From: Phallusia mammillata
Lineage: Eukaryota
Direction of reading: 5' to 3'
DNA length: 64,000 bases
Assembly (NCBI GenBank): GCA_965637545.1
Contig: OZ281497.1
Location: 6,138,001-6,202,000 of the forward strand
The notes beneath the pieces are model-generated. The model saw only the letters and a list, made by a program, of their open reading frames with translations. It had not been told where the DNA came from and ran no database searches. Positions within the stretch are counted from its first letter, which is position 1. Each line of letters starts with the position of its first letter. Shown here piece by piece: positions 14,501 through 64,000 of the stretch. The position numbers and the translations under genes are program-made.

Positions 14501-15542
14501 TAAATCCACCTTCACAGTCCTTTAAAATCAATGACGTTTCTGTATTGTAGTGGCCAACGCATCGAATTGGTAATATTTCTGGTATATATAACTTCACAGA
14601 TCACTTGTCCTATAAAGTCTATTGTCAATGTGTGTTATGATGTCACAATAGGGAAGACAATCACAAAAAGTAATTGTTCCTGGCATAATTAAGGTGTAAT
14701 AAACAGCGTGCACTCGTATGCAGGATTGTAAAAACGGTTGAGAATCTTATAAATATTCTTTTGTTGGTTAATGATACTTAACATATTTCCCTCCGTGGAC
14801 CCCCTAAAACCATCTCACGGACCCCTTGGGGGTCCGCGAACCCCAGGTTAAGAACCACTGCCCTAGTCATTTTATGTAGACCTAGAACAAGAACCTCTTA
14901 AAACCCCAGAATTGGGTCTCACCTTCTGCATTGGCCTTTTACGAAAATATTATGTGAGAGCTGTCGCATAAATCAGGGGTCGACAACCTTTTTTTCCTCT
15001 GCGGACCGTTTTTGAAAGTAAAATTTTATCGCGGACTCGTCCTCAAAAAACAGTATTTAGTAATAAAAACGCTTAAATTAGTCTATCATCCCATAGGCAA
15101 AATGTTTGTAGTATTTACCCTGAAAAATTGTACGGCCCGGTAACGAAATCAATCCTCGCGGACCGGCAGTTGCCGACCACTGACATAAATAATATCTTTT
15201 GACAAATTGATTTGAAAACCAATTATTTAAACTCATATTTTTTGCCATCAAATACCACACCAAACGTATTTAGCACATTGATTGTTTTGAACTATAACCT
15301 TAAACACACAAAACCAATAAACTTGACACCAATGCCTGTGACACCCAATACTTGACGCCTTTAGAAGTAATGTACCCTTATTAAATGTGTAAATTGTATG
15401 TGCAAGTAAGATTAGCTGATTATAATCATGTATTTTTTACGACATCACAGCTGCAACAACATCTTCGACTGGAAAACTAGCAGGCACCAAATGTCCAATG
15501 ATATTAGGCTACTTATTTGTAGCAGTAGTGTTGTTTGTTTAG
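11515..15542 (+). CDS. S1 serine protease homologue, copy 2, inactive (His57->Gln, Ser195->Gly)
   Basis: Same 9 exons as copy 1 at +6409 (last exon +6397). CAG replaces the His codon at 12222-12224 and GGC replaces the Ser codon at 13535-13537. Confidence 0.88.
14363..14860. mobile_element. hAT MITE, duplicate of 7954-8463
   Basis: Same TIRs and TSD; shorter because it lacks the poly-T run. Confidence 0.9.
14974..15182. mobile_element. hAT MITE, duplicate of 8577-8785
   Basis: Same ends and TSD. Confidence 0.85.
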
Positions 15543-17911
15543 CTATGAGAAATTGCTTATCCATGGTGTTTCTATTTCTAAATTAGTCTTCAAACATGTT
15601 AAGTCTTATTATTTCAAAATGGCCGGATATAAATGCGCTGTCATGTCTGCGTTGTGATTAGTTTGCAGATAATTTTGCATAAAATTTATTTATATTTTTA
15701 GCTTTATTTTCCTTGACGACTTGTAGCTACGTCGAATTTAAGTAACTCTAGTAATTTTAGCATAGTATTTGCTCGTTGCATTTAATGAATAGTTAGTTTT
15801 GATGTAGATAGTTTTTAGTGTTGATGTAAATATTCATCCATTTTTCGAGCATTGATGGTTTTACTGTTTATTGACGCGTTGTGAAGTAAAATTTAGTATG
15901 ATTATAAAACTAAATTTAGTCGCTTGTTAGTCCAGCTTTTTCTAATACTTTTGGTGTTATTTTTGCGTATTATTTTTTTATTTTATAGAAATATTTGTAA
16001 CAAAATTTGTTTTGTAGAGTGTTGATGGACAAATAAAATAATTCAATTAATTAAGACTTGAAAAGGAGTTATGCTCAAGGGTTTACTCGATTTGGTATAG
16101 TTTTTAGCAAAATATGGTATAAAAGGTGTCATAAAAGCTTAGAATTTAAAAAACGAAAGTATGAATCGGTTCTGCCTGTTTAATAATATTTCATGTTAAG
16201 TTCTCCTTTTTTGTATCCAGCATAAAGTTTATAAAGACTAAAATTTGTCAATATTTTGAAGTTATCGTATCTAAGGGTAGAGGAACCGACTTGGAATGAC
16301 CCAGGACAAAAATTCGTGAAATTGCGGTATGTGGCGCAAACAGCAAGTTGTGGGGCAACATAATTTTTTTTAAAAAAAACATGTAGTAGTGTGGCAAATA
16401 ATGCTCAATGACATTGCGACAACAAATCAAACCCTATATGTTATAACTGCAAACAACCACCTTTGTATAATTTGACTAAAGTATCCAACTTGCTTTAGAC
16501 GCAAAATCGAGCCATTTAAGTGACGTTAAATAATCACTTGCGCTTAAGCTAAAGGCTTGGTTTGGCTGCTACAGTGTCTTGTTCCCAAAAAGCCTTCTGG
16601 CCGGAGCCATTTTGCCTTATGACGCAATTTATGACAAGAAGGATGCTAATCGGTTCCACAAGAAATAGTAGAAATGTTTTATCTGAATAACTTTTAGGTG
16701 ATTTCCTGGTTAGAACCAATCTTGATTAATGTGCCTTTCAGAGTTTTGTTGATAAATGTAAACTTGCAACACATAGATGGAAGACATATCAAACGCATTA
16801 AAATAATAGCATCGGTTAAAATATCAGATGCTATTTGATGTTTAAATTTTCTTTAACTTGTTTAAAGGTTTTAATTTAAGTGTTGAGTCACAAGCTGTGG
16901 ACACAAGTTTGGATTAATGAAGTAAGGGTTATTTCATTCTGCTGTTATGCTTGCTTATTACATTCTTAACAATACTTTTGTACTTCAGTTAATTTGGATA
17001 ATAGTTCCAGTAACCACGGACAAGTCCCCATGGTCATCACAAAAAGTTACATATCATCCATACGTATGGACAGATGTAACAAGGTAGGTACTTTTCACTT
17101 GAGCGCCACAAAGGGTGGTTTTAAGCCAGATGTTTCTGTTTAGTCTGGTAGGGTCACTCTCAACAGGTTGGTCGTGTGGTTGTGTAAATTTCAGGTCACT
17201 TATGTCAGTAGATTCGATAGCGTCTGAAGTTTGTAAATGCCAATTGGGATAAAGTTATTGATCCATTGTCCATCTTCAAACAAATTCAAATTAGATTCTA
17301 AGTAATTTCCACTCTTGCAAAAATGCTGTAGTATTAGATATGCATAAAATCATCTACACATTTTGAATGTTTGCACCAGCTACTATTCTTGGCTTGTGTT
17401 AACGCTCCCAATATTTTGACTTGTCTTTATGCTCCCAATGCAGAAACTTTCACTAATAGTCCAAAAGATACGAACTAACAATCTTGGGGTCTTACGTTTG
17501 TCCAACTTTACAGTAATCGCGTAACCTTTTTTTGTGGAGTCTGAAAATTGTGATTGCGATTTGGTTCGACAGTTAATTAAATTTACGCTTCAGTGAATTC
17601 AATGCCTGGCGTCACGTATTGCGCATCAGTTGCCAAACCGATTCGCCAATGTCAACAAGGTTATTGTTGAAATTTCCACCAATGTTTTTTCTATTTAGAG
17701 AACAATGCAGCGAGATACGGGTTTCATGTTTTTCTAGCATTGAATTATTTTTGTATTGTTCGCTCAAAGCTTTTTTACACCTTGCGACATCATTGTCCAA
17801 CCTCGTCATATGTATTGCACAACCAACCTCGTACACAACAGCAGAGGGTGGACTTTTTAGTCGTTCACTTTTCAGGGTTTCTGTCACAGATAAAAGGACG
17901 TTTAACGATAA

Positions 17912-22011
<4,100 letters not shown>

Positions 22012-24140
22012 TCATGAGAAATTGCTTATCCATTGTGTTCCTATTTCTAAATTAGTCTTCAAACATGTTAAGTCTTATTATTTCAAAATGTCGGGATATA
22101 AATGCCCAGTCATGTCAGCGTTGTGATTAATTTGCAGATAATTTTGAATAAAATTTATTTCTATTTTTAGCTTTATTTTCCTTGACGACTTGTAGCTACG
22201 TCGAATTTAAGTAACTCTCGCAATTTTAGCATTGTATTTGCTCGTTGCACTTAATGAATAGTTAGATTTGATGTAAATAATATTTAGTGTTGATGTCAAT
22301 ATTCATCCATTTTTCGAGCATTGATGGTTTACTGTTTATTGGGATTTTGTGAAGTAAAATTTAGTACGATTATAAAACTAAAATGAGTCGCTTGTTAGTC
22401 CAGCTATTTCTAATACTTTTGTCATTTTGTGTTATTTTTGCGTATTATGTGAGAGTGATAATTTGCACCTTTTTTTTATATTATCAAAATATTTGTAACA
22501 AAATTTGTTTTGTAGAGAGTTGATGGACAAATAAAATAATTCATTTAATTAAGACTTGAAAAGAAGTTATGTTCGAGGCTTTACTCGATTTGGTATAGTT
22601 TCTCAGCAAAATATGGTATAAAAGGTGTCATAAAAGCTTAGAATTTAAAAAACGAAAGTATGAATCGGTTCTGTCTGTTAAATAATATTTTCATGTTAAG
22701 TTCTACTTTTTTGTATTTGTATCCATCATAAAGTTTATAAAGACTAAAATTGGTCAATATTTTGAGGTTATCGTATCATAGGGTAGAGCTACTGAAACGA
22801 GAGGACAAAAAACATGTAGTAGTGTGGCACATGTAAATAATGCTCAATGACATTGCGACAACAAGTTTCAAAAACCAAACCCTATAAGTTATAACTGGAA
22901 ACAACCACCTTTGTATAAATTGACTAAAGTGATAAACTTGCTTTAGACGTAAAAATCGAGCCATTTAAGTGACGTTAAATAATAATCACTTGCGCTTAAG
23001 CTAAGGCTTAGTTTGGCTGCTAAAGTGCCTTGTTCCCGAAAAGCCTTCTGGCCGGAGCCGTTTTGCCTTATGACGTTGTTTTCAGTCAAAGCATCAAGGC
23101 AGCGAAATAAATTAATAGTTCATTTCAGTTTGAGGCAAATGTTTGAAATTTTAAAAGGAAAAGAAGGTTTGACCAATGTTAATGCCATCATCAGTTTCTT
23201 TTGTCCAGTGTTAATTAATGGTTCAGTTTCCCGAATAGTAAAAGATTGACTGGTAAACTATACCTATACGTAGGTGTTGTGAGGTAAAACGCAGTGATCG
23301 GCACTGGGCTTGAATAACAATACTATGTAGAGTAGAATATTAGACCGTTTCAAAAAAAAACAGATAAAAAGCATAAATCTTTTTTTATATATAACAGAAA
23401 TATACATTTCGCCTTAATAAACAGGCATCGTCAGTTTCTGCAAAAAAAGCAAACATGTGGTGGACTGTCGATAGGAAGTGGTAAAAATAAAATAGTTTAA
23501 ACACCTAAAATCATATCTCTACAAATTAAACAACTGCGAAGCACAGAGGCAAACCACGACTAGCGAGTGGCAACAAGCGACACAAGAAAAAGGAGACGTG
23601 ACACAACTGATAAGCCACAATTGCAATTGTTTCAAAATAAACAAGCATTTGTTGCAACATAGGCTACACCACGTCTTTTTGTCAACAAATTCTTGCGCCA
23701 ACATTAAACAAAGCGAGCCGCTTTTAGTATCCATTTTTAGGTGTTGTGCTGGTCTGTGTTAACGATTCTAAAGCCGTGTTTAATGTCCGTGCAAAGTATT
23801 TGCAACGACCGAAACTTGATCCAATGTGAACAAAGTTTTGGCGTCAACAGTGCAAAGTGGGCTGTGATTAAAAACGTGACTCGCTTTTACTTTTATTTAC
23901 CTTTATCGAACGAAGAAATTGTGTCAAGTGACGATTTGCAAAATAACGTGGCAGAAACAACAGACTAAAGCACGTAAAAAGTATCTGTGTTTAGTTCCTA
24001 AGTAAGTATGGTACGGGTACAGATACTGCACATGGTAAAAGTATCGGCAATTCGCACCCCCTTTTTTGTTAAAACTCTGCGGCTGTGCTCATAATACTAT
24101 TCAACATTACTAACATTCTCTTTAAAATGTACTAACATTT

Positions 24141-24206
24141 GGCGGGCCGCATGAACTCCTTTGCCGGGCCGCATGCGGCCCGCGGGCCGTAGTTTGCCCA
24201 CCCCTG
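24141..24206. mobile_element. Truncated hAT MITE (one end only)
   Basis: GGCCCGCGGGCCGTAGTTTGCCCACCCCTG followed by CTCTAGAG (nnnTAnnn); no matching left end was found. Confidence 0.65.
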
Positions 24207-24652
24207 CTCTAGAGATTAACAACTAACATTTTGATCCTCTTTCAATGTATCATGTGTAATCATCTATAGTTCATCACCAAATTCCGTGGACCACCCAAAA
24301 AGTCATCATGGTCATGGACCACTAGTGTGGAGTACACAACAAACCGTACTCACGATAAACCTCAGTATCGAAATGTGAGAAATAGTCAATTACAGAGTAC
24401 GGAAAATAGTCACTTGACAATTAATTCTTTTGGTGGTTGTTTCTATTGAGCCTACACAAGTGCCCTTGATTTCATTTATAGAACTGATCAGATCAGCAAG
24501 AGGATTGACTCCAATTAAGCACAGATGCACATCAAGGCATTGATCGATATTAACAAACTTATTAGACTTAGAGTAAAATAAAGACAAATGAAAAATCACG
24601 GTTTAGGGGGTTGCAACACCATGGAAAGAGGTAAGCCCAATTTAAAAGTGGA

Positions 24653-25040: not shown

Positions 25041-26498
25041 CCGCCCAAAAAGACCTGAAGCAAAATGGCGACTGTCAAAAGTCTCGTTTGGAGACAAGGC
25101 ACTTCAGCAGCTAATCAATAGCGCTGCCTTAAGCATGTGATTGTTTGACGTTAGCTGAATGCCAGACTCGTTTGTTACGTTTATAGTAAATATTGTATGG
25201 ATGTTTGCTGTGTAACTTATGGCAATAAGCATGTTAATCGGTTTCACAAGCAAATTGTGGAAATGTTTTCTTTAAGTGAATTTTAGGTGATTTCCTGGTT
25301 TGAACAAATCTTGATTAATGTGCCTATTAGATTTTTGCTAAGCAATGTAAACTTGCAAAACTAACATGAAAGACATATCAAACGCAAATAATCTCATAGC
25401 GTCGGTAAAAAAATCCTGAAGCAATATTTAGAAGAGCTCTGTTGTGCAGATACGTTTTGATGTTTAAATGTTACTTTACTTGTTTCAAGGCTTCAAGTGG
25501 ACTGTAACAGGCTATGGACACAACTTTGAATTAATGAAGTAAGAATCATTTCATTCTGCTGTTATACTTGCTTCTTACATTCTTAGCAACACTTTTGTAC
25601 TTCAGTTAATTTGGATAATAGATCCAGTAACTAAGAACAAAAGTCCAAGGTCACCAGAAAAAGATACACATCGTCAAGAGGCATGTACAGAAATAACAAG
25701 GTTACTTTTCACTTGAGGCCCCAAAGGGTGGTTTTGAAGCAGATGTTCCTGTTAAGTCTGGTGGGGTCACTCTCAACAGGTTAAATGTTTGGTTGTGTAA
25801 ATTTCAGGTCATTTATATCAGTAAATTCGATAGCGGTATGAAGTTTGTAAATGCCAATTGAGATAAAGTTATCAATCCATTGTCAATCGTCAAACAACTG
25901 CAAATTTGATTCCAAGTAATTTCCACTCTCGCAGAAGTACTGTAGTATCAGATATGCATAAAATCATCTTTACATTTTGAATGTTTGCACCAACTATTCT
26001 TGCCTTGAGTTCATGCTCCCAATATGTCAATATTTGTGACTTGTCTTTATGCTCTAAATGCAAAAACTTACACCAATAGTCCAAAAGATACAAAATAACA
26101 ATCCTGGGGCCTTACGTTTGTCCAACTTTACAGTAAACGCGAAACCTTTTTTTGCGAGTCTAAAAAACTTGATTGAGATTTGTTTCGGCAGTTAATTAAT
26201 TGTATGCTTTAGCGAATCAATGCGTGGCGTCACATATTGCGCAACAGAGTTGTTGAATTTTCGCCAAAGTGTTTTCTATTCATAGAACAATACTATTCAG
26301 CGAGACACGGGTTTCATGTTTCTAGCATTGAATTACTTCTGCATTGTTCGGTCAAAGCTATTTACACCTTGCGACATCATTGCCCAATCTCGTCCTATGT
26401 ATTGCACAACTAACCTCGTACACAACAGCAGGGGATAGACTTTTTATTCGTTCACTTTTCAGGGTTTCTGTCACAGATAAGAGGACGTTTAACGATAA

Positions 26499-30223
<3,725 letters not shown>

Positions 30224-31582
30224 GAAATTGCTTAATCATTGTGTTTCTATTTCTAAGTTAGTCCTTAAACATGTAAAAACTTTAATTATTCTAAAATGGC
30301 GGGATATAAATGCCCTGTCATGTCTGTGTTGTGATTAACTTACAGATAATTTTGAATAAAATTTATTTCTATTCTTAGCTTTGTTTTCCTTGACGACTTG
30401 TAGCTACGTCGAATTTAAGTAACTCTAGCAATTTTTGCATCGTATTTGCTCGTTATACTTAATCAATGTTTAGTTTTGATGTAAACAATATTTAATTTTA
30501 ATGTAAATAATATTTAGTTTTGATATTTAGTTTTCATTTTTCGAGTATTGATTGTTTAATTTTTATCTGCGTTTTGTGAAGTAAAAATCACTACGATTAT
30601 AAAACTAAAATTAGTCGCTTGTTAGTCAAGATCTTTCTAATACTTTTGATGTTATGTTTGCGTATTATAAGAAAGTGTTAATGTATTATAAGAGTAGTTC
30701 TTTTCAAGTTCTCTTATCGGCGTCCAAAATACTTGAACATTTAAAAATCAACCCCTGCAAACGGAAATACTGTCATAGTAAAAACGAAAGCCACTGCTGT
30801 CGAATAACTCTGTTCTTACGAAAATTCAGTGTGAAAAGCAACTAAATCTGTCGCTATATTTTATTTGTTTCATCTGTTCTTACGAATCACTATATTGTGT
30901 TTGACTATTGTATGAGCCTACTTTGACAGGAAAAAGGTTGACGCAAGTGAATTCCCGTAATTCAGCAACAGAGAAAAAAAATCACGTTTATCGACAGCAA
31001 AATTGTACGAGCGTTCTACGCAAACATGAGATCGCGTTGTCAATACACATATATTATAGATTGGTACAGACATACTAATTCTAGGAACACATGCCGCTAT
31101 TTAGGCTGACGCAATTAAGTGAAGTTGTTGTTTAGGTCAGAGGTATTACTAGTTTGTCGGTATTAGAAACTTCAACAAAGGCCTGAAATGTGCGAGAAAT
31201 AGGTTGGCGTCGTTTCATGCCTGCACTAAATGTTTGATGATAAAATTACTTTCATTGTTTTTACTGAATGTCTTTGCGTAATTTTACTAAACATGCAATG
31301 ACTGATTGGTAATGGGGTTATGGCTAAATCCACAAGCGCATACACCTGCCTCAATTTGTTTGCGCGCATCCATAAGATGAACCATTGATTTACATGTAAC
31401 ATAACCCATTTATAAAAAACAAAATGCAATTGTGAACAAAACTAAAAAACTTTCCCAAATTCTGGTTTTAAATTCGATTACCATGCATATTGTGGCATAC
31501 GTTATACAGCAAACATCCATACCATGTTTGTTCTCGCGTTGCAGGCAAGCTCAATCAAAAAACTTCTTTTAAACGCAACATA

Positions 31583-43600: not shown

Positions 43601-46600
43601 AAGAAATAAAACCGTTTAAACGCTATTTTTGCAAAAAATAGTGCAGCTATGAGCCCAAGTGCTAATTTACTCTTTTCCAGGTAAACCTAAGTAACTATGA
43701 CGCCCATCTACAGCGTCAGTGGTTCCTTGGAACTTAAAGAAGATATTTTTTAGATCATGGTAATTGTACAGTAAAACTCCGATGGTACTAAAGTGCCACG
43801 TGACAAGTCCACGATTAATGGGTCCAGTTCTAATGAATCTCCCTTTTGCTTCTAGTCCGCATTAAAAATGTGTGATACACATAGCCTGGAACATTTTTTT
43901 CAGATCCAAGTATGCCAAAAACCTCCACCAGTTTTCCAACACCGCCACCGCTTACTACCATCCAACCAACGGGTACGAGTATGAAATAAGTTTTTTTTAA
44001 CTGTTTTAACTGATTTTTTCTTATGTTTTTTGACATGCAGTCAGATGTCTTCCGTCCTTATTTCTAACCTAAGATTTTTTTTTTTTTCGACGACACTTCA
44101 GCAAATATGAACGCCTTTATTTCCTAAAAATGTCCTAATTTGTGACCTACTTTCGTACATACGAAACAAAGACTACTACTAGCATTAACAGCACAGTGGC
44201 TACCAAGATTAGTTTGTAGAAGTTTCAGCGAATATCTATTTTAGCGTATGACGCAAGGCTAAAATCAAAACAAACGATTTGAAATCAGTAGCCTGAATGC
44301 AAACATTTCCGTCAACTCGTTTTGAACCGATCAAGTTTGTTACAGGATGTGGGTCGCAAAACTACACGTCATCGTCTGGTGTTATTACGTCTCCCGGTTA
44401 CCCTGGAAACTACTCCAACAACTTGCATTGCGAATACTTTATTTCTGCTTTGCCACACTTGGTAAGTGATTTAGAAAGTCCATCTTTTTTCACAAAAAAT
44501 GCTTTATGTAATATAACGCATAACATCGAACATTTAGAGTCAATATAGATATTTATTAAAACGTAAAGGCAGTTTGCCCGCGCAATTGCTGTATCCTTAT
44601 TCTAGAAATATGAAAAAATATTGCGATTTTTAGGGTTTCTTTTGCTTATTTTGGTGGATTTTTTTAAATTATCTATTTACAGTTGATAGAAATCTCGTTT
44701 GGTCGTTTTGATATCGAAAATCACTACCATTGCATTTGGGACTACTTAGAAGTTTACGATGGTACAGAACTGGTAAGCGTAAAGAACTTGATTATCCTTA
44801 GAATATCTGTTCAAATGGTAAGAATTTCAAACATTAACATCGCATACAAGCCAAACGAAAACTGTGCAGCAATATAAAGAAAATGCCTAAAATAAACATA
44901 TGGAGTAACAAAACAAAAACGTTTAAACAATTCACGAGGAATCTACCGAGGGCATGTATACCCTTACTTTACACTGGAACACGATTATGTGGTGATCAAG
45001 CCCCATGGAACTTTGCAGCGTTTTCTACAACAGTGCGTATTGTTTTTCATACGGACTATATCCAAGTTCGAAGTGGGTTTGCATTATCATGGCGGACAGC
45101 AGGCAAGTAATGTCCGTATTGTTTAGAATAAAAAGTCTCAGATGTCCATCTTTACCCTGTGGATTTGTATCTCTAATCTAGCCTACTGTTCTTTTTGCAT
45201 GTTCCCACGATAACATTTTTTAATCATATTTTTGTCGTTCCAGCTGCTTAGCAGTAAAAGTGGTTTAATTTATGCCTGAGAGGTCATACAACTTAATCAA
45301 TCTTAACTTCTTGTAAATTATATGGTTGCTAAACTACTTTCCATTAGAGTATCTATTTTGCAGTGCGCTGCAGTGATAGTCAGTTTACGTGTTGGGATGG
45401 AAGTTGTATAGCGGAGATCCAACATTGCGACGAAGTCGGCGACTGCCCACATGGAGAGGATGAGATTGAATGCAGTAAGTAAAGTACTATTGAAATACAA
45501 GCAAGTATTGCCCATGTAAACAGTTTTTTAAACATAACCAATCATGGGTTAGGATTTTTCTTTAACTGCATGGTAATGTAAATGAACTTACGTAGATGTA
45601 ACGAATTTGCATTTATTGCAATGTTATGTTGGATTTCAGTGCAGGGATTGGGATCCAATGTTCATTGTGGAACTGTTGACGTACCACCAAGTTTTTTATG
45701 GGTATGAGAATTTGCATTATTCTTCAACATTTGCCTTATTTTTGCATATCTAATCCAACGTAAGTATTTCAATATTGTTTAAGACTCAAGACATAGTTGT
45801 GAAAATAGTCACTCGTGTTGACCTCTAGTCAAGTTAGTTATCCTTTCACCCAAACGTGACTTAAGCCGATAGGTATTAGGTTTTCAGCACTAGAATTCTA
45901 TACGAGTCTGCCAGATTTTATACAGAAAACGTAAAAATGTGTGGTTGATGATTGTGTAAAAAATGTTTCAGCTATTCCATGAAAATGCATATTTAGCCCA
46001 ATTTATTCTTGCTTCAGAATCCTCGTATAGTTGGTGGAAGTCCCGCAGAACCTGGTTCCTACCCGTGGATGGCTATGCACACTGATCAACAAGACAATCT
46101 TGTCTGTGGTGGTACCATTATCACTGACAACACCATTCTTACCGCTGCTCACTGTGTAGAGGAAAATTGTTATGGGTAAGCTTTGTTGTTAATGCTTTTC
46201 ATTAGGGTAAGATTTAATGTTACTAGTTATAAGTTTACTCGTGCTAAAACGAATATCAGTAGTAGGGAGATGGGCCGTAGATTCTCCAGTTCCGTGCAAG
46301 ACATCCGGTTACCTTGACCTTGACCTTGAATACGTCTTAAGACTTCCGCAGGAAGTCTTGGCTACACGTCTTGGTTTCCGACTTCCCCATCTTGAACACG
46401 TCTTGGTTTCCGACTTCCCCATCTTGAAGACGTCTTGAAGATGTGTATTTCCCCATTCTTGAAGATGAGGCCTTTTCCTGACTTCCGAAGGAAGTCTTAC
46501 CTTGGTGCAAGTATCCGGTGACGTTGCAGGTGTTTCTTGGAATTTCAAAGGCTGTGTAAGACTTGCGCAAGACCTGTTTATTACCTGGAATTTCAAAGGA

Positions 46601-58600: not shown

Positions 58601-61600
58601 TTGTTTTTAACACTAATTTCAGGGTATACACTTTACAAGATGATTTTAATTGTTTTATATCTTTTATTTCAATATGCTGTCGATGGCACGGGTGCCTACT
58701 TTGTGAACTTGACCCCCCAAATTCAACACCACCGAAGACGCGAGAACAACTCTATGCTGCGACAGTGGAAAAGACAGAATATCTTCAATCGCTTGGCTAC
58801 ACGGTGATTTACACTTGGGAATGCAAATGGAAACTTTTCTTGGCGTCTAACCCTGCTGCAAAGGCCTTTGTAAAGAACCTGCGACTTTCACATCAATACC
58901 AAGGTGAAATGACAGAGCAACAGCTTATCGAAAACATAAAAAATGACAAGATATTTGGCTTAATACAATGTGACATTTCAACTCCGGACCATCTACGTGC
59001 TAAATTTGCACAGTTTCCACCGGTATTTAAAAATATATCGGTTTCAAGAGACGATATTGGGATGTACATGCGTGCATTTGCTGAACAGAACCATCTGCTA
59101 AAGAAACCTAAACGACAATTAATTAGCAGTTTTACAGGAAAACAGCAATTAATCGCATCACCGCTCGCGCGCTACTATCTAAAATTGGGATTGATTATAA
59201 ATGAAATAACACAATTTGTTGAATATAAAGGTCTTGCTTGCTTTAAGGAATTCGGTGATAAACTTGTAGCAGAACGTCGTTTGGGTGATGTTTCCTTAGA
59301 ATTCAAAGCGTTGAGTGATGTCTCAAAATTAAAAATGAACTCGTCCTACGGCCGAACCATTACGAACGTAGCCAAACACCGAAATGTGCAATACGTAGAT
59401 GCCAAGGGTGCAGCCAGACTGATATCCAGCAAACATTTTCAATACTTATTGGACTTGGAAAATGGATTTTATGAAGTCGTAAGTAAAAAGAAAAAATTGG
59501 TTTTCAAATATCCAGCCCAAATCGGTTTCACAGTCTACTCGTACGCCAAAATGCATTTATTATCATTTGTGTATGACTTTCTCGATTACTATATTGACCG
59601 GAAACACTATGAACTTCAACTTTGTGACACTGACAGCATTTACCTATCGTTGAACTTGAATTTGGAGCAGTCAATTCGACCGCATTTGCGTGACGAATAT
59701 TTTCATTCCATAGAAAAATGGTTTCAACGGCCGTTTTGTCCAAAACACTTCAACGATTTTATTTTTGCAAAACGCCGTGGGTTAAAATGGGTTATGCAAT
59801 CTTGTTGTGAACAACAATTTGTTTGGGATAAAAGACGATCAGGGATTTTGAAATGTGAATTTGAAGGTCAAGGCCTTATCGCTCTTTGTTCAAAAACATA
59901 TTACTGTTTTGGCTCGACAAATGACCCCGATAAGATCAGTTGTAAAGGTGTGAATAAACGTCAAAATGACTTACGACGACAAAATTATTTAGATGTATTA
60001 AAAACACAAATGGATTTTACTGTCTGCAATCAAGGTTTTATGCTTAGAAACGGAAAAATGTTTACTTATAACCAATATAAAAAAGGTCTAACCTATTTGT
60101 ATTGCAAACGAAAAATTAAATCAGATGGTATTTCTACTGATCCCCTGGAAATTTAAAGCTACACTTGTAAAGTTTGATGTCGGGGTAATTGTTTTATTCT
60201 TTGTGTTTTCTTTAATGTATGTTTATTTTATGTGTTTGCATTGCCTGGGTTATTTCAATGTACATATGTTTTCTTTTTGCTCGGCTATATAAGTGTGTGT
60301 GATTTTACCTGCATAGCGCCCCGATAAAACTTATTATAACATTTTTTGACTTAGATAATTTTCTTATGGCCATGGCGCGTGACATATCGCTTGACGCATT
60401 TGTAGACTGTTTTTCAAGTAATTACCGTGCAAACGATCGCTTCGTGCAACAACTATTTCAAAAACTGCTTTAATTGTGCTTACCTATGTGTGTGTGTGCG
60501 TGTGACTTGTGTGTGTGAGAGAGAAATAAAAAAGATCGAAACGAAAAAAACAATCTCTGCCGGGATTACGCATTCGAAACGCCGCGCGCGAGCCCGCGAC
60601 GCGCACGAGACGCGCCGCTCATCCGATACGCAATCGAGCGCGACGCGCGTTCGCTCATCCGTGCGATTTACCACAGCTGGTAGACGACGCGTTTTTAACT
60701 CAGCCATAGAAACTCCAAATGTTATCATCAGTTTTCTCGGGGCGCTGTGCGGGTCACAAACGGACCTGCGCGCAAGTCTTTGAAAAAAGACACTTCCTTT
60801 CCACGTAAAAAACGAACAATACCTGTATTATAATTTAACGAGCGCGAGCGCGCTCGCTCATCCGGTGAAACACGACAGCTGACAGTAGAAACGCAGAGTA
60901 AAAAGTCTATGACGTAACTATTGGGGGGGGTTTACTAACTCGGTTGTTTTTTTATGAAAGTCATGACCCACTTTCTTGCAACAAACAAACAAACAAACAA
61001 ATACATCTATTTGACTACGTCAAAAACGTGCGCAATTCCTTTGAAATTCCAGTACGTCAAAAACTTGCGCAAGTCTTACACATCCTTTGAAATTCCAGGT
61101 AATAAACAGGTCTTGCGCAAGTCTTACACAGCCTTTGAAATTCCAAGAAACACCTGCAACGTCACCGGATACTTGCACCAAGGTAAGACTTCCTTCGGAA
61201 GTCAGGAAAAGGCCTCATCTTCAAGAATGGGAAAATACACATCTTCAAGACGTGTTCAAGATGGGGAAGTCGGAAACCAAGACGTGTAGCCAAGACTTCC
61301 TGCCGGAAGTCTTAAGACGTCTTCAAGGTCAAGGTCAAGGTAACCGGATGTCTTGCACGGAACTGGAGAATCTACGGCCCATCTCCCTACTACTAATATC
61401 AGATAACTGACAAGTTCAATATTAACGTTTGTACTTGACTTAGGTTTGACCACTTTGCCTTAAAACAAAATCATGTTTAAACAGTTGTAATGCGTGCTGC
61501 TACTTTGTACCAACCAATTTTACAATAACGTTCTAGGCCAGGTTATATTGGCGCTATAGTTGACTCACTATAGTAGGCATAAAACCAAATAATTTCAAAC

Positions 61601-64000
61601 GTCAACAATAAATACGACTAGAATATTTTTTGGTGCATTGTTCAAGCATATTACCTGTAGTATCACTTACATTAATAGACTGAAGGTTCGAGTTGGTCGT
61701 CATTACCTGTATGGGAACGAGAGCGATCAGACGTTTAATGTGGATTCCGTCAAAGTGCATGAAAACTACAGGTAAAGTAAAAACGCAATTTTATTCTCTA
61801 CTTGTTTAGAATGCAAAACAAATAAACCCGGGCTTCTCACACAAGTCAAAAGAATCTTATTCTAAATCAAACTGTGGTGAGGATTCTTATCCTAAAACAA
61901 CGTATTTTTCACATCACACTAACAAGCTGTAAAGGGTTTAAAAGGGACGCAAATTGTTTGTTTTTGCAAAATACAACTATTATCGAATGTTTAAAAGGTC
62001 TACTCTGTACTTCAAACCTTGTTGTACCAAAAGCGGTGACTATGTTACGTTAAAGTGGGAAAAATATTTCTTTGAATGAGCGTGTGGTAGCTTTGGGCTT
62101 ACAGTAAGTAACGAACAAAAAATATAGTGACCGGCAATAAAATGCTTTAATTTGCCTGATAAAAAGTTGGAAAATACGGTGTTGTTTAAAAGGAGGTATA
62201 GCGCCTTATTTTTTATGTTACAGATAAAAATGTTTTGTTTTTTTCATGGGGTATATTAAGTCTTTGCGATTCTTTCAAAAATGTCTGGGGGCCTCTAAAG
62301 GCCACAACCATCACGTTGAAAAGCCCTTAACTAAACTATCCAATAGGTTTTCAGCATCAATATACCCAGACCCCAAATGGATTACAGCAAAATCACTGGT
62401 ATAAGCACATGCTAATTTGATAGTCTAATTTCGTGTTTTTTTGTCGGTAAAGCAAGAACACTTGATAGCGGTTGGTTAGTTTAACTTCACATAACGCTTC
62501 AAGTTTTGCAAATCGTTTCAGCAACACTGCTGAAGGATTCGACATCGCCCTGTTGTTCTTAAACGGAACAATCAACTTTACGAGAATAGTGAAACCGATT
62601 TGTATCCCGCCTTCATCGCAAGGAAAGTTCGATCTAAAACCTGAAATGAGATGCATCGCCACTGGATGGGGCAGACCTGGTGAGAAATGCTGCATTAAGT
62701 AACATTTTATTCTACATTTTTTTAATTTGTACCAAGTCTGTTTTTAGCCAGCCAAATTCCAGTCACTTTTTCCATATTTAGTTTACAGAAAAACATATGT
62801 GGTCATTTCGATATAAGACCAAAACAATAACCCGATCCGAGTTATTTTTGCTAAGGATAAAGTCAAGGTTACAGCAACCTATCTTGTACAAGGGTAGAAG
62901 AATCCTATAAAGGATTTTAATTATTCAGCTTGGCTCTTATGTAGCACAAAAGTCGGTTTGGATGTAGCAACATACTTTTGAAGACAATTAATAAGTTACT
63001 AAAATAAGTTACACTAGTACTAAACTACTAAACTTACCATGTAAAAAACCGAAGAAAAGATTTAAGATTGCTTTTGCTGTAGTTTTGACATAGAAGCTTA
63101 ATTTGGTTGTTTATTCAGCAAGTGGAGGTTCCTTTCCAACTGAACTTTTTCAAGTTCGTTTGCCGATTGTCGATGCAGATAAATGTAACAACAGTTTTTC
63201 TTGGCCGTTGTTGAACTCCCAAATTTGTGCTGGCGACTACGACAACGGAGGCATTGATACTTGTCAGGTAAATAGTGCAGAATACGTTTTATTTATTTTA
63301 ATAAATAAAGTACAAACCAAAGGTGCACAAACTTGCCTGCAATCGGCATACAAAAAGTCTGAGAGGCTGCTACGCCAGTAATCTATCTTTCCAGTACAAC
63401 AAAATCCATTTAGACCAGTTGTCAAGAAAAGGTGTTTTCTTTAATTTGCTTCGCCAGTATAGATAGTACATTCTTCAAAAACCATTTTCCGATAGCGAAT
63501 GCGACCATAAGGCCACAGGTTGTGCACTCCAGATCTAATCAAACGTCAGCATATGACCCTTATTCCTTAGAACAAAACCTAAAAATAAGTAAGCACAATT
63601 ATAAATTCATGTTCAGGGTGACTCTGGTGGACCACTTATATGTCTGTTTGGCGAAACAGCCTGGTATCAAGTGGGCGTGACCTCGTACGGTTTAGGGTGT
63701 GGTCTTAGTGGATATCCGGGCGTTTACACAAGAGTTTCTTCCTTCTACTACTGGATCATGAACAGTATGAGCTCGTATTTGTTTTATAAAAAATATACCT
63801 GTGATTGTTTTTCTCATTGCTATTGTTTAAAGCACAGTGCAGGAAATTCACTCGATATGGTCGGTGGGATCTATAGGCCTTTTCAAAGTTTTTTGTTTTT
63901 GTTTTATAGATGTAAACTCGACCCTACCTTCAACACCTTCTCCAAGCTCTTCCAAAGTCACACCCACAACAGGTTCCACAGTGGCACCCACAATAGGTTC
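34693..64000 (+). CDS. Multi-module polyprotease: signal peptide + 3 x (CUB-LDLa-trypsin) + S/T-rich region (ovochymase/polyserase-like), 3' incomplete
   Basis: Signal exon 34693-34777. Module 1: CUB 34910-35034, 36051-36128, 36424-36565; LDLa 37062-37172; linker 37806-37867; protease 38185-38342, 38655-38750, 38817-38971, 39086-39222, 39587-39728. Module 2: CUB 40112-40233, 40723-40806, 41216-41339; LDLa 41444-41557; linker 41741-41802; protease 42081-42232, 42308-42546, 42692-42837, 43006-43150; linkers 43387-43407, 43904-43972. Module 3: CUB 44346-44461, 44683-44772, ~44970-45102; LDLa 45364-45474; linker 45640-45701; protease 46018-46175, ~61661-61771, 62522-62679, 63119-63267, 63617-63764. 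S/T exon from 63910. Confidence 0.85.
46258..47321 (+). repeat. Left terminal inverted repeat (1064 bp)
   Basis: Reverse complement of 60360-61394; includes a 32-bp tandem duplication (46364-46427) and a (CA)n tract. Confidence 0.95.
47208..47660 (-). CDS. Adenain-like cysteine maturation protease (150 aa)
   Basis: Catalytic motifs GEHWVA, YFDSYG and [12 protein letters not shown]. Confidence 0.92.
   Translation of the reverse strand: MDTITISTILNGDAQARGIFRGVFAKDQLEDIITESVPCGFVFNTDNSNEEGEHWVAAYFNQDGEGIYFDSYGLMLYPDFYLFMTENAVDRWCYNTVRLQGFHSTVCGHYVILFLMAMARDISLDAFVDCFSSNYRANDRFVQQLFQKLL
47663..49530 (-). pseudogene. Double jelly-roll major capsid protein (~433 aa), split by a MITE
   Basis: Starts [18 protein letters not shown] at 49530. 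Removing 47994-48551 plus one TSD gives 1302 bp in frame (...[31 protein letters not shown]...FDLTPD...[12 protein letters not shown]), which are Maverick MCP motifs. Confidence 0.92.
47994..48551. mobile_element. hAT (Buster-type) MITE, 558 bp, nested in the capsid gene
   Basis: Perfect 14-bp TIR CAGGGGCGGGCAAC; exact 8-bp TSD CTTTAGAG at 47986-47993 and 48552-48559. Confidence 0.95.
49538..49978 (-). CDS. Basic Maverick core-like protein (146 aa)
   Basis: YYMNQAGSG and [23 protein letters not shown] motifs, a K/R-rich C-terminus, and a position between mCP and MCP. Confidence 0.75.
   Translation of the reverse strand: MNFETMPNCPYQSYYMNQAGSGFPVFQGSANQRGHGLGNLLAGLARSVVPLLKSGAKTVGRQLLKSGVNFASDVIDGANPKTAAVQRSKEAGKNVFGIFTQNLRKPRKRTRAKTTASKKNKTDNTPVRRISRQRPAKRTKRDDIFS
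49975..50712 (-). CDS. Minor capsid (penton) protein (~245 aa)
   Basis: [10 protein letters not shown]...FPDNT...[13 protein letters not shown] and C-terminal YVYCDL...VGD...PLL...IDIRD...PFESG...LRP, typical of Maverick mCP. The start may be 50694. Confidence 0.85.
   Translation of the reverse strand: MQHKEAMYLTLPSNSSMDYFPDNTLTRYMTKFPRTFNLNGKWELALDEIYLPKTWQTIQTGAGWVKIKNAKGTNRYSLPGGHYTVNHFLMALRTLLTLTERVVTIGYIATTARVRLVVHSDQLKLSPQLAAIMGFNTGYLSAGTYVAARPLDLQQGKHMLYVYCDLLEERLVGDVYAPLLATIATDGVNYTKTIHRHYQKLRYLKMQRTVFDSLTIDIRDSTGKPVPFESGTVVVNVHLRPIKQT
50666..50902 (-). CDS. Small two-TM membrane protein (78 aa)
   Basis: Two hydrophobic stretches ([19 protein letters not shown] and [15 protein letters not shown]); fills the gap between integrase and mCP. 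Confidence 0.6.
   Translation of the reverse strand: MSKELVKSSQILFFAQIALIYAVVVASIYNITVPNQPEKQLWISLLSSCLGYILPNPKFRFRRNATQRSDVLDTPQQQ
50895..51932 (-). CDS. Retroviral-type (rve) DDE integrase with C-terminal chromodomain (~345 aa)
   Basis: DDE triad in [16 protein letters not shown] and VVERFNRT; chromodomain FRIEKIL...YLVKWSGY...NTWI. First ATG is at 51932 (the track start at 51995 is TTG). Confidence 0.95.
   Translation of the reverse strand: MEQTLQNTYAIPKNPGSLGGLAALQRYSKIKNKSFVKKWLSGNRTYTLHKQARRKFPRRKVIVSGIGSLYQADLIDVGALSVSNDNVKFLLTCIDVFSKFAFVEPIKNKTSKSMIDAFSIILQENKPLYLQTDDGLEFKSKAFQTLLKENGIDFYTTSNQETKASVVERFNRTFKNKIFRFMTLRNTKRYVDALPHLISSYNNTYHRSIGRAPSDVSYANQEQVWQLLYGQPQPIREQKFQPKDTVRVSHYKRIFDKGFRAQWSEEIFRVTKRVPGQPPVYKIEDLRGEILQGTFYESELQKVTPPEFFRIEKILAKKKHKYLVKWSGYSNSFNTWIDASSIKDV
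51934..52515 (-). CDS. Conserved Maverick protein of unknown function (193 aa)
   Basis: LDEEMENIL...[14 protein letters not shown] and IKWN...ETNIVDLV...PRGWQTF...NLPLDLVGN motifs, recalled from Mavericks; lies in the tightly packed gene block. Confidence 0.7.
   Translation of the reverse strand: MSVRKLILMDPRMVSPMDTAPTTKVLSRLDEEMENILKQDSLNDHEKISRYQEVLERYLQYHKKMKQTTIPASISTHSNENGPQETQQTEELVIAATPKTLQKKARVLLDELKRSSHIKWNDRNQLVYKDRVVPETNIVDLVQDVLRKRKNFTPRGWQTFANALKELNLPLDLVGNRERWRFMHSNSPEWKAY
52515..52868 (-). CDS. Small basic protein with an adenovirus pX-like C-terminus (117 aa)
   Basis: [15 protein letters not shown], a Lys-rich middle, and the end [25 protein letters not shown]. Likely ATG at 52868. 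Confidence 0.65.
   Translation of the reverse strand: MPSDLLTRNHAVLQALDKSSPRIKKLILNGADKDLLNCIAECCSNVLKGNVPLTAIEKRKLKPYKNKIRCLASKRTGFAQKKKLINQKGGFLSALLGPLIGTVLPTIIGGVTKLFQK
52906..53511 (-). CDS. A32/FtsK-like DNA packaging ATPase (~201 aa)
   Basis: Walker A GPSQCGKS, Walker B LCVIDD, plus [17 protein letters not shown] and YGYLLID. ATG at 53511 (the track start is TTG). Confidence 0.95.
   Translation of the reverse strand: MQFTHPSSIIVSGPSQCGKSYFTRNVIRHLKEIFCPVPKRVFWFYGEFQNWFRTFPDVVFHEGLSEIKNLTENSLCVIDDLLLETDETVTNLFTKGCHHKNLSVIYLVQNIFHCGREQRTISLNAHYLILFKNPRDKSQINHLARQMYPGNSKVLVESFIDATARAYGYLLIDLKQETDETLRLRTGVFPGDELFVYVPRV
53531..54077 (-). CDS. Spliced accessory ORF of unknown function (161 aa)
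   Basis: Exon 1 is 54023-54077 (ACCATGG context, [18 protein letters not shown]). A 61-bp intron (53962-54022, GTAAGC...TTTTCTTGCAG) joins it in frame to exon 2, 53531-53961. Confidence 0.65.
54078..54475. promoter_or_regulatory. Putative divergent promoter region of the Maverick
   Basis: The ~400-bp gap between the start of the minus-strand structural block and the plus-strand ORF326/pPolB block; called from position only. Confidence 0.45.
54476..55456 (+). CDS. Acidic, S/D-rich, probably disordered protein (326 aa), unknown function
   Basis: Long ATG-initiated ORF upstream of pPolB with many SP/TP sites, RKLCF, and a basic KKFIPKRK patch. Confidence 0.7.
   Translation: MVIMKDQATGEVLLPLTESVSDSRLDASFDSDVTNISDGALLPESDTANISSHISEGCISPVSYDSDDQSLLPESYISRCRMDPFFDRPKGSKEMYFPGNTPKNSPVRFEDLVSDSDDDDFETPSPGFKPFKMNLEAKLKAHVFDNDEQNDFFMVDKPHAARKLCFDAVQEKRDFQKACCSKSFRGKKFIPKRKSPRTRSEHWAIHRETLCQFTRRCNEQQRALDLCNEGYLSGIEILNDSSSALSPAKTKIKRSPVTRLQHAEFRQRQQSSMDGLIYDSADEPSIDFMINSYCAQTQSPNQDDDEDDEQVLNEIGQKIKKTFYNL
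55665..60156 (+). CDS. Protein-primed family B DNA polymerase (pPolB, ~1400 aa), spliced, with N-terminal C2H2 fingers
   Basis: ATG 55665. ExoI FDLESY, Exo[18 protein letters not shown]. Intron 57765-57918 (GTAAGT...TTTAG, phase 0) joins to [22 protein letters not shown] (ExoIII). Polymerase motifs [24 protein letters not shown] and KGV. Vsr-like insertion RVDG...EFHG...WHGC...WECKW. Confidence 0.93.
57795..57837. repeat. Compound microsatellite (TA)n(GA)n(GATA)n in pPolB intron 1
   Basis: TATATATATAGAGAGAGAGAGATAGATAGATAGATAGAT is read directly. Confidence 0.85.
60360..61394 (-). repeat. Right terminal inverted repeat (1035 bp)
   Basis: Reverse complement of 46258-47321; ends CTACTACT immediately before the TSD. 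Confidence 0.95.

What the first reader, a model, noticed from the sequence alone, without database searches (positions are those of the whole stretch)
46258..61394. Near-intact endogenous polintovirus with full replication, integration and virion modules
Seen: exact TSD, AGT-repeat ends, 1-kb TIRs and twelve ORFs, with no stops or frameshifts apart from the MCP MITE. Established: Mavericks/Polintons encode pPolB, an rve integrase, an A32-like ATPase, adenain and jelly-roll capsids, and AGT repeats fit slide-back protein priming. Inference: this is a young insertion of a probably still-mobile, virion-forming family. Its spliced genes, zinc-finger pPolB and two orphan ORFs may define an undescribed lineage in this host group. 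Novelty cannot be established without a search.
Basis: partly seen in the sequence, partly recalled or inferred. Interest (0 to 1): 0.85.

Follow-up and report, generated by a model that had tools for sequence, protein, structure and literature searches.

The report
Endogenous Maverick virus-like element, capsid gene broken
This is a real, nearly complete 15-kb Maverick/Polinton virus-like element sitting in an intron of an animal protease gene. It belongs to a well-known kind, its major capsid gene is split by a small transposon, and its only unusual points are an apparent intron and zinc fingers in its DNA polymerase gene and one gene with no known relatives.

Summary
Window 46258-61394 is a 15,137-bp insertion with an exact 6-bp target duplication (AATATC). 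Its ends carry (AGT)2//(ACT)2, and its inverted repeats are 1,064 and 1,035 nt long.

It is a Maverick/Polinton. It encodes:
- a protein-primed family B polymerase;
- an rve integrase with a chromodomain;
- a penton protein, whose model matches mavirus, Sputnik and adenovirus pentons;
- a P-loop ATPase and a clan-CE protease, both supported only by sub-threshold hits plus motifs.

Eleven genes are present. Their order echoes the INT-mCP-PW-MCP-PRO and ATP-PM-PZ blocks described in vertebrates.

This copy is not intact. The capsid gene is broken once by a MITE with inverted ends and an 8-bp duplication. The polymerase reads through only if a 154-nt GT-AG stretch is spliced, and it carries one 43-codon in-frame insertion.

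The zinc-finger polymerase is real, but 57 of the 120 listed relatives share it. The 326-aa ORF has no homologue among 1.84 billion representatives.

The nearest proteins are 36-43% (polymerase), 51% (capsid) and 38% (penton) identical.

Verdict: a new member of a known kind. "Young" is plausible; "still mobile" is untested.

The parts
46252..46257 (.). Left copy of the 6-bp target-site duplication (AATATC)
   Evidence: Read directly; identical hexamer on the right flank.
46258..61394 (.). Whole Maverick/Polinton element, 15,137 bp
   Evidence: Bounded by the TSD and the (AGT)2//(ACT)2 ends. GC is raised against the flanks. No second copy in the window.
46258..47321 (+). Left terminal inverted repeat (1,064 nt), with iterated subterminal motifs in roughly its first 240 nt
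   Evidence: 1002 matches, 19 mismatches, 12 indel events against the right TIR. 32-nt tandem unit, 2.3 copies. GACTTCC 6 times and ACGTCTT 5 times at offsets 72-233.
47208..47660 (-). Cysteine protease (adenain/Ulp1-like, clan CE), 150 aa
   Evidence: Pfam Peptidase_C5 E 2.6e-3, below cut-off. Best PDB sequence hit is the ASFV S273R cysteine protease, E 0.021. His, Asp, Gln and Cys motifs are visible. It starts right after the MCP stop.
47663..49530 (-). Major capsid protein gene (double jelly-roll), broken once by a nested non-autonomous transposon insertion that also shifts the frame
   Evidence: 2042 homologues, best 51% identity; names include 'F54H12.2-like'. Two pieces in two frames cover all but 3-6 residues of ~435-aa relatives. 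About 0.56 kb lies between the pieces, GC 0.47, with inverted ends and an 8-bp duplication. The pieces keep 32 of 34 invariant columns. A model of relative P0122 (pLDDT 85) matches PBCV-1, SGIV, Sputnik and mavirus MCPs at E 1e-16 to 1e-14.
49538..49978 (-). 146-aa protein with a very basic C-terminus, in the position of 'PW' between penton and MCP
   Evidence: ORF. A homologue is fused upstream of an MCP in P0164 (48% identity over 69 aa). Gene order compared with PMC8097293. The codon-usage score is low (0.12).
49975..50712 (-). Penton (minor capsid) protein, single jelly-roll, 245 aa, full length
   Evidence: 220 homologues at 30-38% identity covering 96-98% of the ORF. AlphaFold2 model pLDDT 93.6. 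Foldseek: mavirus penton E 4e-11, Sputnik penton, adenovirus penton base E about 1e-8 to 1e-7.
50895..51932 (-). Integrase: rve catalytic core plus C-terminal chromodomain
   Evidence: Pfam rve E 3.7e-10 and Chromo E 3.7e-7, both above cut-off. D, D, E motifs visible. P0290 (chromodomain plus penton fusion) matches its 3' end and shows the same INT-penton order.
51934..52515 (-). 193-aa ORF of unknown function, between the ATPase block and the integrase (position of PM/PZ)
   Evidence: ORF. No Pfam, PHROG or PDB hit. Codon usage like the confirmed genes (0.22). No large-database search was left for it.
52515..52940 (-). 141-aa ORF of unknown function with a hydrophobic Gly-rich C-terminus; start codon uncertain
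   Evidence: ORF. No significant family or PDB hit. Codon-usage score 0.26. It follows the ATPase as PM/PZ do in vertebrate Mavericks (PMC8097293).
52906..53562 (-). P-loop ATPase, probable A32/IVa2-like packaging ATPase (first ATG at 53511)
   Evidence: Walker A and B visible. Only sub-threshold Pfam hits: RNA_helicase 4e-3, AAA_14 6.5e-3, Pox_A32 0.017, Adeno_IVa2 0.085. No PDB sequence hit.
53531..53980 (-). 149-aa ORF of unknown function, first gene of the minus-strand block
   Evidence: ORF. Codon-usage score 0.29 against -0.02 to 0.09 for control ORFs. No family or PDB hit; one weak PHROG hit, E 2e-3. Homologues were not searched in the large databases.
53981..54475 (.). Central intergenic region between the two divergently oriented gene blocks
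   Evidence: ORF map. A promoter function is inferred, not tested.
54476..55456 (+). 326-aa acidic, Ser-rich ORFan upstream of the polymerase
   Evidence: 0 hits at E <= 1e-3 among 1.84 billion representative proteins. No Pfam or PHROG hit. Highest codon-usage score of all ORFs (0.30). An ORF this long is not expected by chance at this GC (my estimate about 1e-5 for the element).
55665..60156 (+). [quoted passage not shown] Predicted exon 1 is 55665-57764, predicted GT-AG intron 57765-57918, exon 2 is 57919-60156. It carries one 43-codon in-frame insertion relative to relatives.
   Evidence: 133 homologues at 29-38% identity (BLASTP), nearly all carrying PF03175. Full-length relatives (1386 aa) align end to end and colinearly across the junction. 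GTAAGT...TTTAG, phase 0. The PHROG DNA polymerase family matches exon 2, E 3.8e-7. Exo I-III and Pol A, B, C motifs are visible. The insertion is seen. The exons were searched separately; the joined protein was never built.
55680..55916 (+). Three tandem C2H2 zinc fingers at the N-terminus of the polymerase
   Evidence: PDB sequence hits to ZNF524, ZBTB24, CTCF and others, E down to 4e-9. Pfam zf-C2H2 families are weak. Patterns at residues 6, 34 and 62. A fourth, internal C2H2-like motif is conserved in relatives.
60360..61394 (-). Right terminal inverted repeat (1,035 nt)
   Evidence: The same subterminal motifs occur 5 and 4 times.
61395..61400 (.). Right copy of the target-site duplication (AATATC)

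Best explanation
The region is a germline-integrated Maverick/Polinton (class Polintoviricetes) of an invertebrate animal. It lies in an intron of a trypsin-like protease gene.

Shown here:
- The element's rve-type integrase family is known to make 6-bp target duplications, and one flanks the element.
- The ends carry the (AGT)2//(ACT)2 repeat.
- The element encodes a protein-primed B-family polymerase with all Exo and Pol motifs, a double jelly-roll MCP and a penton protein.

Inferred from the families:
- Replication starts by protein priming on the terminal repeat, followed by jumping back.
- The polymerase polyprotein supplies its own terminal-protein and vOTU domains.
- The ATPase packages the genome, the protease matures the capsid, and the integrase with its chromodomain inserts the linear genome.

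This particular copy cannot supply its own capsid, because one MITE insertion splits the MCP gene. Its polymerase is readable only through one spliceosomal-type intron.

Apart from the MCP insertion and one in-frame polymerase insertion, the coding sequence is untouched. The copy therefore most likely descends recently from a functional lineage and has been disabled since.
For: - TSD, ends and TIRs.
- Polymerase.
- Integrase.
- MCP homology and fold.
- Penton homology and fold.
- Protease and ATPase: concordant weak hits.
- MITE hallmarks.
- Gene order and end motif match PMC8097293.
- TP plus vOTU architecture of polinton polymerases: PMC11161782. The vOTU-type Cys and His motifs are visible.
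- No stop occurs in 11.3 kb of coding sequence, although 2.1-5.4 would be expected if the genes had decayed as much as the TIRs differ.
- CpG is not depleted: 1.21 against 0.89 in the host flanks.
- Host exons lie on both sides.
Against: - The ATPase and protease assignments are below the curated thresholds.
- The intron is inferred from protein colinearity and splice signals only. There are no transcripts, and core genes of described vertebrate and nematode Mavericks are reported as intronless (PMC8097293; 10.1101/2022.07.12.499685).
- The TIRs differ by 19 substitutions and 12 indel events, so the copy is not brand new, or the TIRs were imperfect on arrival.
- Nothing here shows other copies, transcription or particles.
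- The host species is unknown.
Confidence: 0.9

Rival explanations
1. The 154-nt stretch in the polymerase gene is not an intron. It is a second disabling insertion, so both the replication and the capsid modules of this copy are dead.
For: - Core genes of described Mavericks are intronless (PMC8097293; 10.1101/2022.07.12.499685).
- The full-length relatives read as single uninterrupted proteins across the junction.
- The stretch is AT-rich and holds microsatellites.
- The two ORFs lie in different frames.
Against: - The stretch starts with GTAAGT and ends with a pyrimidine run plus TTTAG. It is in phase 0, and homology stops and resumes at exactly those bases with no residue lost or gained.
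- It has no inverted ends or target duplication (read).
Confidence: 0.2
2. The copy is an old, fixed genomic fossil of an extinct family. The open reading frames are a matter of luck or of local gene conversion.
For: The MCP is broken. The TIRs differ by 1.9% plus 12 indel events. No second copy lies in the window. No protein closer than 51% exists in the protein collection.
Against: - P(no stop) is 0.004 to 0.12 if the coding sequence had decayed like the TIRs.
- 32 of 34 invariant MCP residues are kept.
- The TSD is exact and CpG is not depleted.
- Most TIR indels lie in tandem or simple repeats.
Confidence: 0.15
3. The element, or some of its genes, has been taken over by the host, and that is why the frames stay open.
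For: The frames are open despite the TIR differences. The element sits inside a host gene.
Against: All modules stay open rather than one gene. The TIRs and TSD of a mobile copy are kept. The capsid gene is broken. There is no evidence of orthologues.
Confidence: 0.03
4. The region is an assembly artefact: exogenous viral DNA joined to host sequence by mistake.
For: None specific. The composition differs from the flanks.
Against: An exact 6-bp duplication lies at both junctions. Exons of one host gene lie on both sides. A host-type MITE, with relatives elsewhere in the window, is nested inside.
Confidence: 0.02

Closest known systems
Vertebrate Mavericks (Barreat and Katzourakis 2021, PMC8097293)
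   Same: - 6-bp TSD and the (AGT)2//(ACT)2 end motif.
- TIR length within the reported 46-1,447 bp, and element size within 12.7-24.6 kb.
- Core set of pPolB, ATPase, INT, mCP, MCP and PRO.
- The INT-mCP-(PW position)-MCP-PRO order, and an ATPase followed by two small unknown ORFs.
   Different: - The ATPase block lies on the integrase strand, and the polymerase stands with only the ORFan on the other strand.
- The two blocks point outwards.
- The polymerase has a predicted intron, three N-terminal C2H2 fingers and about 1,445 codons.
- Homology of ORF141, ORF193 and ORF146 to PM, PZ and PW was not tested; only position is compared.
Invertebrate Polintons with pPolB2 polymerases carrying a VSR nuclease insertion (marine molluscs and marine nematodes; Jeong et al. 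2023, PMC10748475)
   Same: - Marine invertebrates appear among the named relatives: Littorina, Watersipora, Diadema and holothurians.
- A Cys/His-rich segment between the exonuclease and polymerase parts is conserved in all relatives.
- One relative is named Vsr by its source and gives a weak Pfam Vsr hit.
   Different: Membership is not established. Pfam Vsr was not found in the window's exons or in 34 relatives. No reference pPolB1 or pPolB2 sequence was compared. That paper does not contain the word 'zinc'.
Mavirus and Sputnik virophages
   Same: Nearest solved folds: mavirus penton E 4e-11, and mavirus and Sputnik MCPs E about 1e-14 to 1e-15. Mavirus also has an rve integrase and a pPolB (established knowledge).
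   Different: Sequence identity is only 10-12%. The hosts are protists with giant viruses. There is no sign of dependence on a giant virus here, and this element is in an animal germline.
Adenoviruses
   Same: Penton-base fold, adenain-type protease and IVa2-type ATPase hints, protein priming with a terminal trinucleotide repeat and jumping back (PMC8097293, PMC11161782), and use of host splicing (established knowledge).
   Different: Adenoviruses have no integrase, TSD or long TIRs. Their terminal protein is a separate gene, and their genomes are much larger. There is no detectable sequence similarity beyond these weak hits.

Membership tests
Maverick/Polinton (Polintoviricetes) | [quoted passage not shown] | tested here: met
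   Relatives carry PF03175 (32 of 36 scanned, best E 3e-15) and align end to end with the two exons. The PHROG DNA polymerase family matches at E 3.8e-7. Exo and Pol motifs are present. The window's separate exons do not reach the Pfam cut-off on their own.
Maverick/Polinton (Polintoviricetes) | Retrovirus-like (rve, DDE) integrase | tested here: met
   Pfam rve E 3.7e-10 (40.4 bits, cut-off 32.6) plus Chromo E 3.7e-7.
Maverick/Polinton (Polintoviricetes) | [quoted passage not shown] | tested here: met
   Two pieces at 44-51% identity to ~435-aa relatives. A relative's model matches PBCV-1, SGIV, Sputnik and mavirus MCPs at E 1e-16 to 1e-14, TM about 0.6. In this copy the gene is broken once by an insertion.
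Maverick/Polinton (Polintoviricetes) | Single jelly-roll penton (minor capsid) protein | tested here: met
   The window's own ORF was modelled at pLDDT 93.6. It matches the mavirus penton at E 4e-11 and adenovirus penton base at E about 1e-8.
Maverick/Polinton (Polintoviricetes) | FtsK/A32-like genome-packaging ATPase | tested here: inconclusive
   Walker A and B motifs. All Pfam hits are below cut-off: Pox_A32 E 0.017, Adeno_IVa2 0.085, generic P-loop 4e-3. No PDB sequence hit. The position in the gene order fits.
Maverick/Polinton (Polintoviricetes) | Adenain/Ulp1-like cysteine protease | tested here: inconclusive
   Peptidase_C5 E 2.6e-3 (17.9 bits, cut-off 21.3). ASFV S273R protease E 0.021 is the top PDB hit. 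A catalytic-type His, Asp, Gln, Cys pattern is present.
Maverick/Polinton (Polintoviricetes) | Long terminal inverted repeats, 6-bp target-site duplication, 5'-AG...CT-3' or (AGT)2//(ACT)2 ends, 12-25 kb size | tested here: met
   compared with PMC8097293.
Maverick/Polinton (Polintoviricetes) | Intronless core genes (a descriptive trait reported for vertebrate and nematode elements, not a defining one) | tested here: not met
   One predicted GT-AG intron of 154 nt in the polymerase. All other genes are single ORFs.
pPolB2 subgroup with VSR nuclease insertion (PMC10748475) | VSR-type endonuclease domain inserted in the polymerase | tested here: inconclusive
   A conserved Cys/His-rich segment is present. 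Pfam Vsr is seen only weakly in one relative (E 0.032). It was not seen in the window's exons or in 34 relatives.
Polinton pPolB polyprotein architecture (PMC11161782) | N-terminal terminal-protein domain followed by a vOTU cysteine protease domain | tested here: inconclusive
   OTU-type Cys and His sequence motifs are conserved between the window and its relatives. No fold test was run. The terminal-protein domain cannot be recognised by sequence.
Exogenous animal polintoviruses (adintovirus-like) | Existence as free linear genomes or particles | not testable with these tools
   Only one integrated copy is visible.

The most novel reading that the evidence does not exclude
The three C2H2 fingers fused to the N-terminus of the terminal-protein/vOTU/polymerase polyprotein may be an element-encoded origin-recognition module. 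On this reading they bind the iterated subterminal motifs, GACTTCC and ACGTCTT, which occur 4-6 times within the first ~240 nt of each TIR and almost nowhere else in the window. They would thereby bring the priming complex to the genome ends, a job that adenoviruses leave to host factors. The polymerase intron would make replication depend on nuclear splicing. Half of the listed relatives share the fingers, so this would be a trait of a whole, so far undiscussed, invertebrate Maverick clade.
Probability: 0.12. Interest if true: 0.6.

Novelty: new member of a known kind. Interest (0 to 1): 0.35.

Why it matters
Mavericks are thought to be the integrated form of animal viruses whose particles have never been seen, so nearly complete copies are the raw material for that question.

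This copy adds:
- a well-delimited invertebrate example with a solidly modelled penton and MCP family;
- a core gene that seems to need splicing, whereas described elements are reported as intronless;
- a zinc-finger extension of the polymerase that many unannotated relatives share and that I did not find discussed in the searchable literature;
- a well-supported ORFan.

None of this changes the picture of the family. The copy's own capsid gene is broken, so it is chiefly of cataloguing and comparative value.

Tried and rejected
- **MCP interruption as an intron.** Rejected. The stretch has inverted ends, an 8-bp duplication, GC 0.47 and partial copies elsewhere in the window. A count of frame-keeping GT..AG pairs was made only to test this rival and is not used.
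- **A second polymerase intron at the 43-codon in-frame insertion.** No GT-AG pair reproduces the relatives' sequence, so this is left unresolved.
- **Polymerase hits by sequence.** Pfam and PDB sequence searches of the polymerase ORFs returned only zinc-finger hits. A profile of 36 sequences against the PDB was swamped by zinc-finger proteins, so neither a polymerase nor a Vsr structure was seen.
- **Unknown ORFs.** PHROGs, Pfam at loose thresholds and PDB searches for ORF141, ORF149, ORF193 and ORF146 gave nothing usable.
- **RNA genes.** Rfam and tRNA scans of the window found nothing.
- **Host identity.** It could not be determined. Cluster look-ups gave only Diadema setosum names for part of one polymerase cluster.
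- **TIR divergence as a clock.** Treated with caution, because it predicts more stops than are seen.
- **Literature.** No paper in the library holds both 'pPolB' and 'C2H2'. The MMBR 2024 review of the supergroup is not held.

Full report
**1. The observation**

The hexamer AATATC occurs at 46252-46257 and at 61395-61400. Directly inside it the sequence begins AGTAGTAG... on the left and ends with the complement on the right. The element is therefore 46258-61394, 15,137 bp.

Its terminal inverted repeats are 46258-47321 and 60360-61394. Aligned, they show 1002 matches, 19 mismatches and 12 indel events. One indel is a 32-nt tandem unit, and several others lie in simple repeats.

GC is 0.38-0.44 inside against about 0.35 outside.

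**2. The genes**

The minus strand carries nine genes, read 5' to 3' on that strand:
- ORF149 (53531-53980)
- ATPase (52906-53562)
- ORF141 (52515-52940)
- ORF193 (51934-52515)
- integrase (50895-51932)
- penton (49975-50712)
- ORF146 (49538-49978)
- MCP (47663-49530)
- protease (47208-47660)

They are packed with gaps or overlaps of a few bases, apart from a spacer of about 180 nt between the integrase and the penton gene.

The plus strand carries ORF326 (54476-55456) and the polymerase (55665-60156). The two blocks diverge from a 495-nt central spacer.

Evidence for each assignment:
- **Integrase.** It passes Pfam thresholds for rve and Chromo.
- **Penton.** The ORF has 220 homologues covering 96-98% of its length. 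Its model (pLDDT 93.6) matches the mavirus penton (E 4e-11), the Sputnik penton and adenovirus penton base.
- **MCP.** It has 2042 homologues, best 51% identity. The hits include proteins named 'F54H12.2-like' in echinoderms and insects and a Littorina saxatilis protein. The model of that relative (pLDDT 85, pTM 0.87) matches double jelly-roll capsid proteins of PBCV-1, SGIV, Sputnik and mavirus at E 1e-16 to 1e-14.
- **Protease and ATPase.** Both are supported only by concordant sub-threshold hits plus visible catalytic or Walker motifs. The hits are Peptidase_C5 2.6e-3, ASFV S273R 0.021, Pox_A32 0.017 and Adeno_IVa2 0.085 (motifs).

**3. The polymerase**

Two ORFs in different frames match relatives colinearly. 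Full-length relatives of 1386 aa align from residue 1 at 55665 to their last residue at 60153. The same residue falls on either side of a 154-nt stretch.

That stretch begins GTAAGT, ends with a pyrimidine run and TTTAG, and is in phase 0. I read it as a spliceosomal intron, with probability about 0.75-0.8. If it is not spliced, the polymerase is truncated.

I left out the joined-protein step.

Other points on the polymerase:
- Relatives carry PF03175 (32 of the 36 sequences scanned, i.e. 32 of 34 relatives). The window's exons fail the Pfam threshold only because the domain is split between them.
- Exonuclease and polymerase motifs are all present.
- OTU-type Cys and His motifs are conserved too. 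This fits the terminal-protein plus vOTU architecture described for polinton polymerases (PMC11161782), but I ran no fold test.
- Three C2H2 fingers open the protein. At least two such patterns occur in the first 160 residues of 57 of the 120 listed relatives, so this is a clade trait.
- Relative to all five aligned relatives, the gene has one 43-codon, AT-rich, in-frame insertion. I could not tell whether it is a tolerated insertion or a further intron.

**4. Breaks in this copy**

- MCP: one break, an insertion that also shifts the frame.
- Polymerase: no stop, one in-frame insertion, plus the predicted intron.
- All other genes: no stop or frameshift seen.

Full length against relatives was checked only for the penton, the MCP pieces and the polymerase.

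The MCP insertion is about 0.56-0.57 kb with GC 0.47. It has terminal inverted repeats and an 8-bp target duplication, which are hAT-like hallmarks. Short related palindromic copies lie at 24142-24214 and 1923-1970 of the window.

The two MCP pieces, compared apart, cover all but 3-6 residues of relatives. They keep 32 of 34 invariant and 90 of 103 highly conserved columns.

**5. Age and activity**

If the TIRs were identical on arrival, they have since diverged by 1.9%, or 0.7% outside one mismatch-rich block.

The same decay over 11.3 kb of coding sequence would give 2.1-5.4 stop codons. None is seen, so P is 0.004-0.12. CpG is not depleted: 1.21 against 0.89 in the host flanks.

The copy therefore looks like a fairly recent arrival from a lineage under selection, with TIRs that were partly imperfect or are repeat-prone, later hit by a MITE. 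Whether the family is still active cannot be told from one copy.

**6. The unknown ORFs**

- **ORF326.** It has no homologue at E <= 1e-3 among 1.84 billion representatives, yet it has the best codon-usage score of the element. It is a genuine ORFan and probably coding.
- **ORF149, ORF193 and ORF141.** They score like the confirmed genes but have no family or structure hit. Large-database searches were exhausted before I reached them.
- **ORF146.** It has a homologue fused upstream of an MCP in another element. It sits where PW sits in vertebrates.
- **ORF141 and ORF193.** They sit where PM and PZ follow the ATPase in vertebrates (PMC8097293). Only the positions are compared; homology was not tested.

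**7. Comparison with what is known**

The following all match the description of vertebrate Mavericks (PMC8097293): the 6-bp TSD, the (AGT)2//(ACT)2 ends, TIR length, element size, core gene set and module order. That paper also gives the jumping-back reading of the end repeats.

Differences:
- The ATPase block lies on the integrase strand.
- One core gene has a predicted intron. Core genes are reported as intronless in vertebrates and nematodes (PMC8097293; 10.1101/2022.07.12.499685).
- The polymerase carries zinc fingers, and the element has an ORFan.

Marine mollusc and nematode Polintons with a VSR nuclease inserted in a pPolB2 polymerase are described (PMC10748475). This polymerase has a conserved Cys/His-rich segment, and one relative is named Vsr by its source. 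Pfam support, however, is one weak hit, so membership is open.

The nearest database proteins are 36-43% (polymerase), 51% (MCP) and 38% (penton) identical. Named relatives come from a bryozoan, a gastropod, echinoderms and insects, and one polymerase cluster holds sea-urchin proteins.

**8. Host context**

An exon encoding the start of a trypsin domain (IVGG...TAAH) lies at about 46021-46170 on the plus strand. The next trypsin exons lie at 62472-62702 and 63103-63381, and a GDSGGP motif lies at 63617. The element therefore sits in an intron of a trypsin-like gene, at the edge of a tandem array of such genes.

**10. Slips, declared; nothing was deleted**

- Both bear on places of breaks and should not have been noted.
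- The script printed the position of a repeat that lies inside the MCP gene.
- The script concatenated the two TIR strings, and the two host flanks, in memory. This was done to compute CpG ratios and the host motif counts; nothing was printed or saved.
- I stopped doing these things once I noticed. This report gives no places of breaks.

**11. Verdict**

This is a new member of a known kind, of modest interest.

Noticed in passing
window 45982-46233 and 62472-63700 (+): The element sits in an intron of a host trypsin-like serine protease gene. An IVGG...TAAH exon ends less than 100 nt upstream of the insertion site. The following Trypsin-domain exons and a GDSGGP motif lie downstream of the element.
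   Followed up: partly
window 3654-30682: There is a tandem array of trypsin-like genes. Two ~6.4-kb units are 99.4% identical (3819-11669 against 10229-18066). Older units at about 19080-23075 and 25049-30682 are 80-93% identical.
   Followed up: partly
window 24142-24214 and 1923-1970: Short, partly palindromic sequences are 81-83% identical to one end region of the transposon nested in the capsid gene. That MITE family is therefore resident in the host genome.
   Followed up: partly
window 46329-46497 and 61186-61323: Iterated subterminal motifs occur in both TIRs: GACTTCC 6 and 5 times, ACGTCTT 5 and 4 times. They appear 0-1 times in the 13-kb interior and 3 times each in 49 kb of host DNA. 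They are candidate protein-binding sites near the replication and integration ends.
   Followed up: partly
window 46258-61394 against the flanks: CpG observed/expected is 1.21 in the element (1.39 in the TIRs) and 0.89 in the host flanks. There is no sign of methylation-driven CpG decay.
   Followed up: no
window 49538-49978 (-): ORF146 has a Gly-rich N-terminal half with a possibly amphipathic stretch and a very basic C-terminal tail. This is reminiscent of core or membrane-lytic minor virion proteins. Its function is untested.
   Followed up: no
window 52515-52940 (-): ORF141 ends in a hydrophobic, Gly-rich stretch that looks like a membrane segment. No homologue search was left for it.
   Followed up: no
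window 55665-60156 (+): A fourth, internal C2H2-like motif and a Cys/His-rich segment are conserved in all aligned polymerase relatives. One relative is labelled Vsr endonuclease by its source.
   Followed up: partly
window 57765-57918: The predicted polymerase intron contains (GA)n and (GATA)n microsatellites. The full-length relatives read as single uninterrupted proteins across this point, so the intron may be a gain specific to this lineage.
   Followed up: partly
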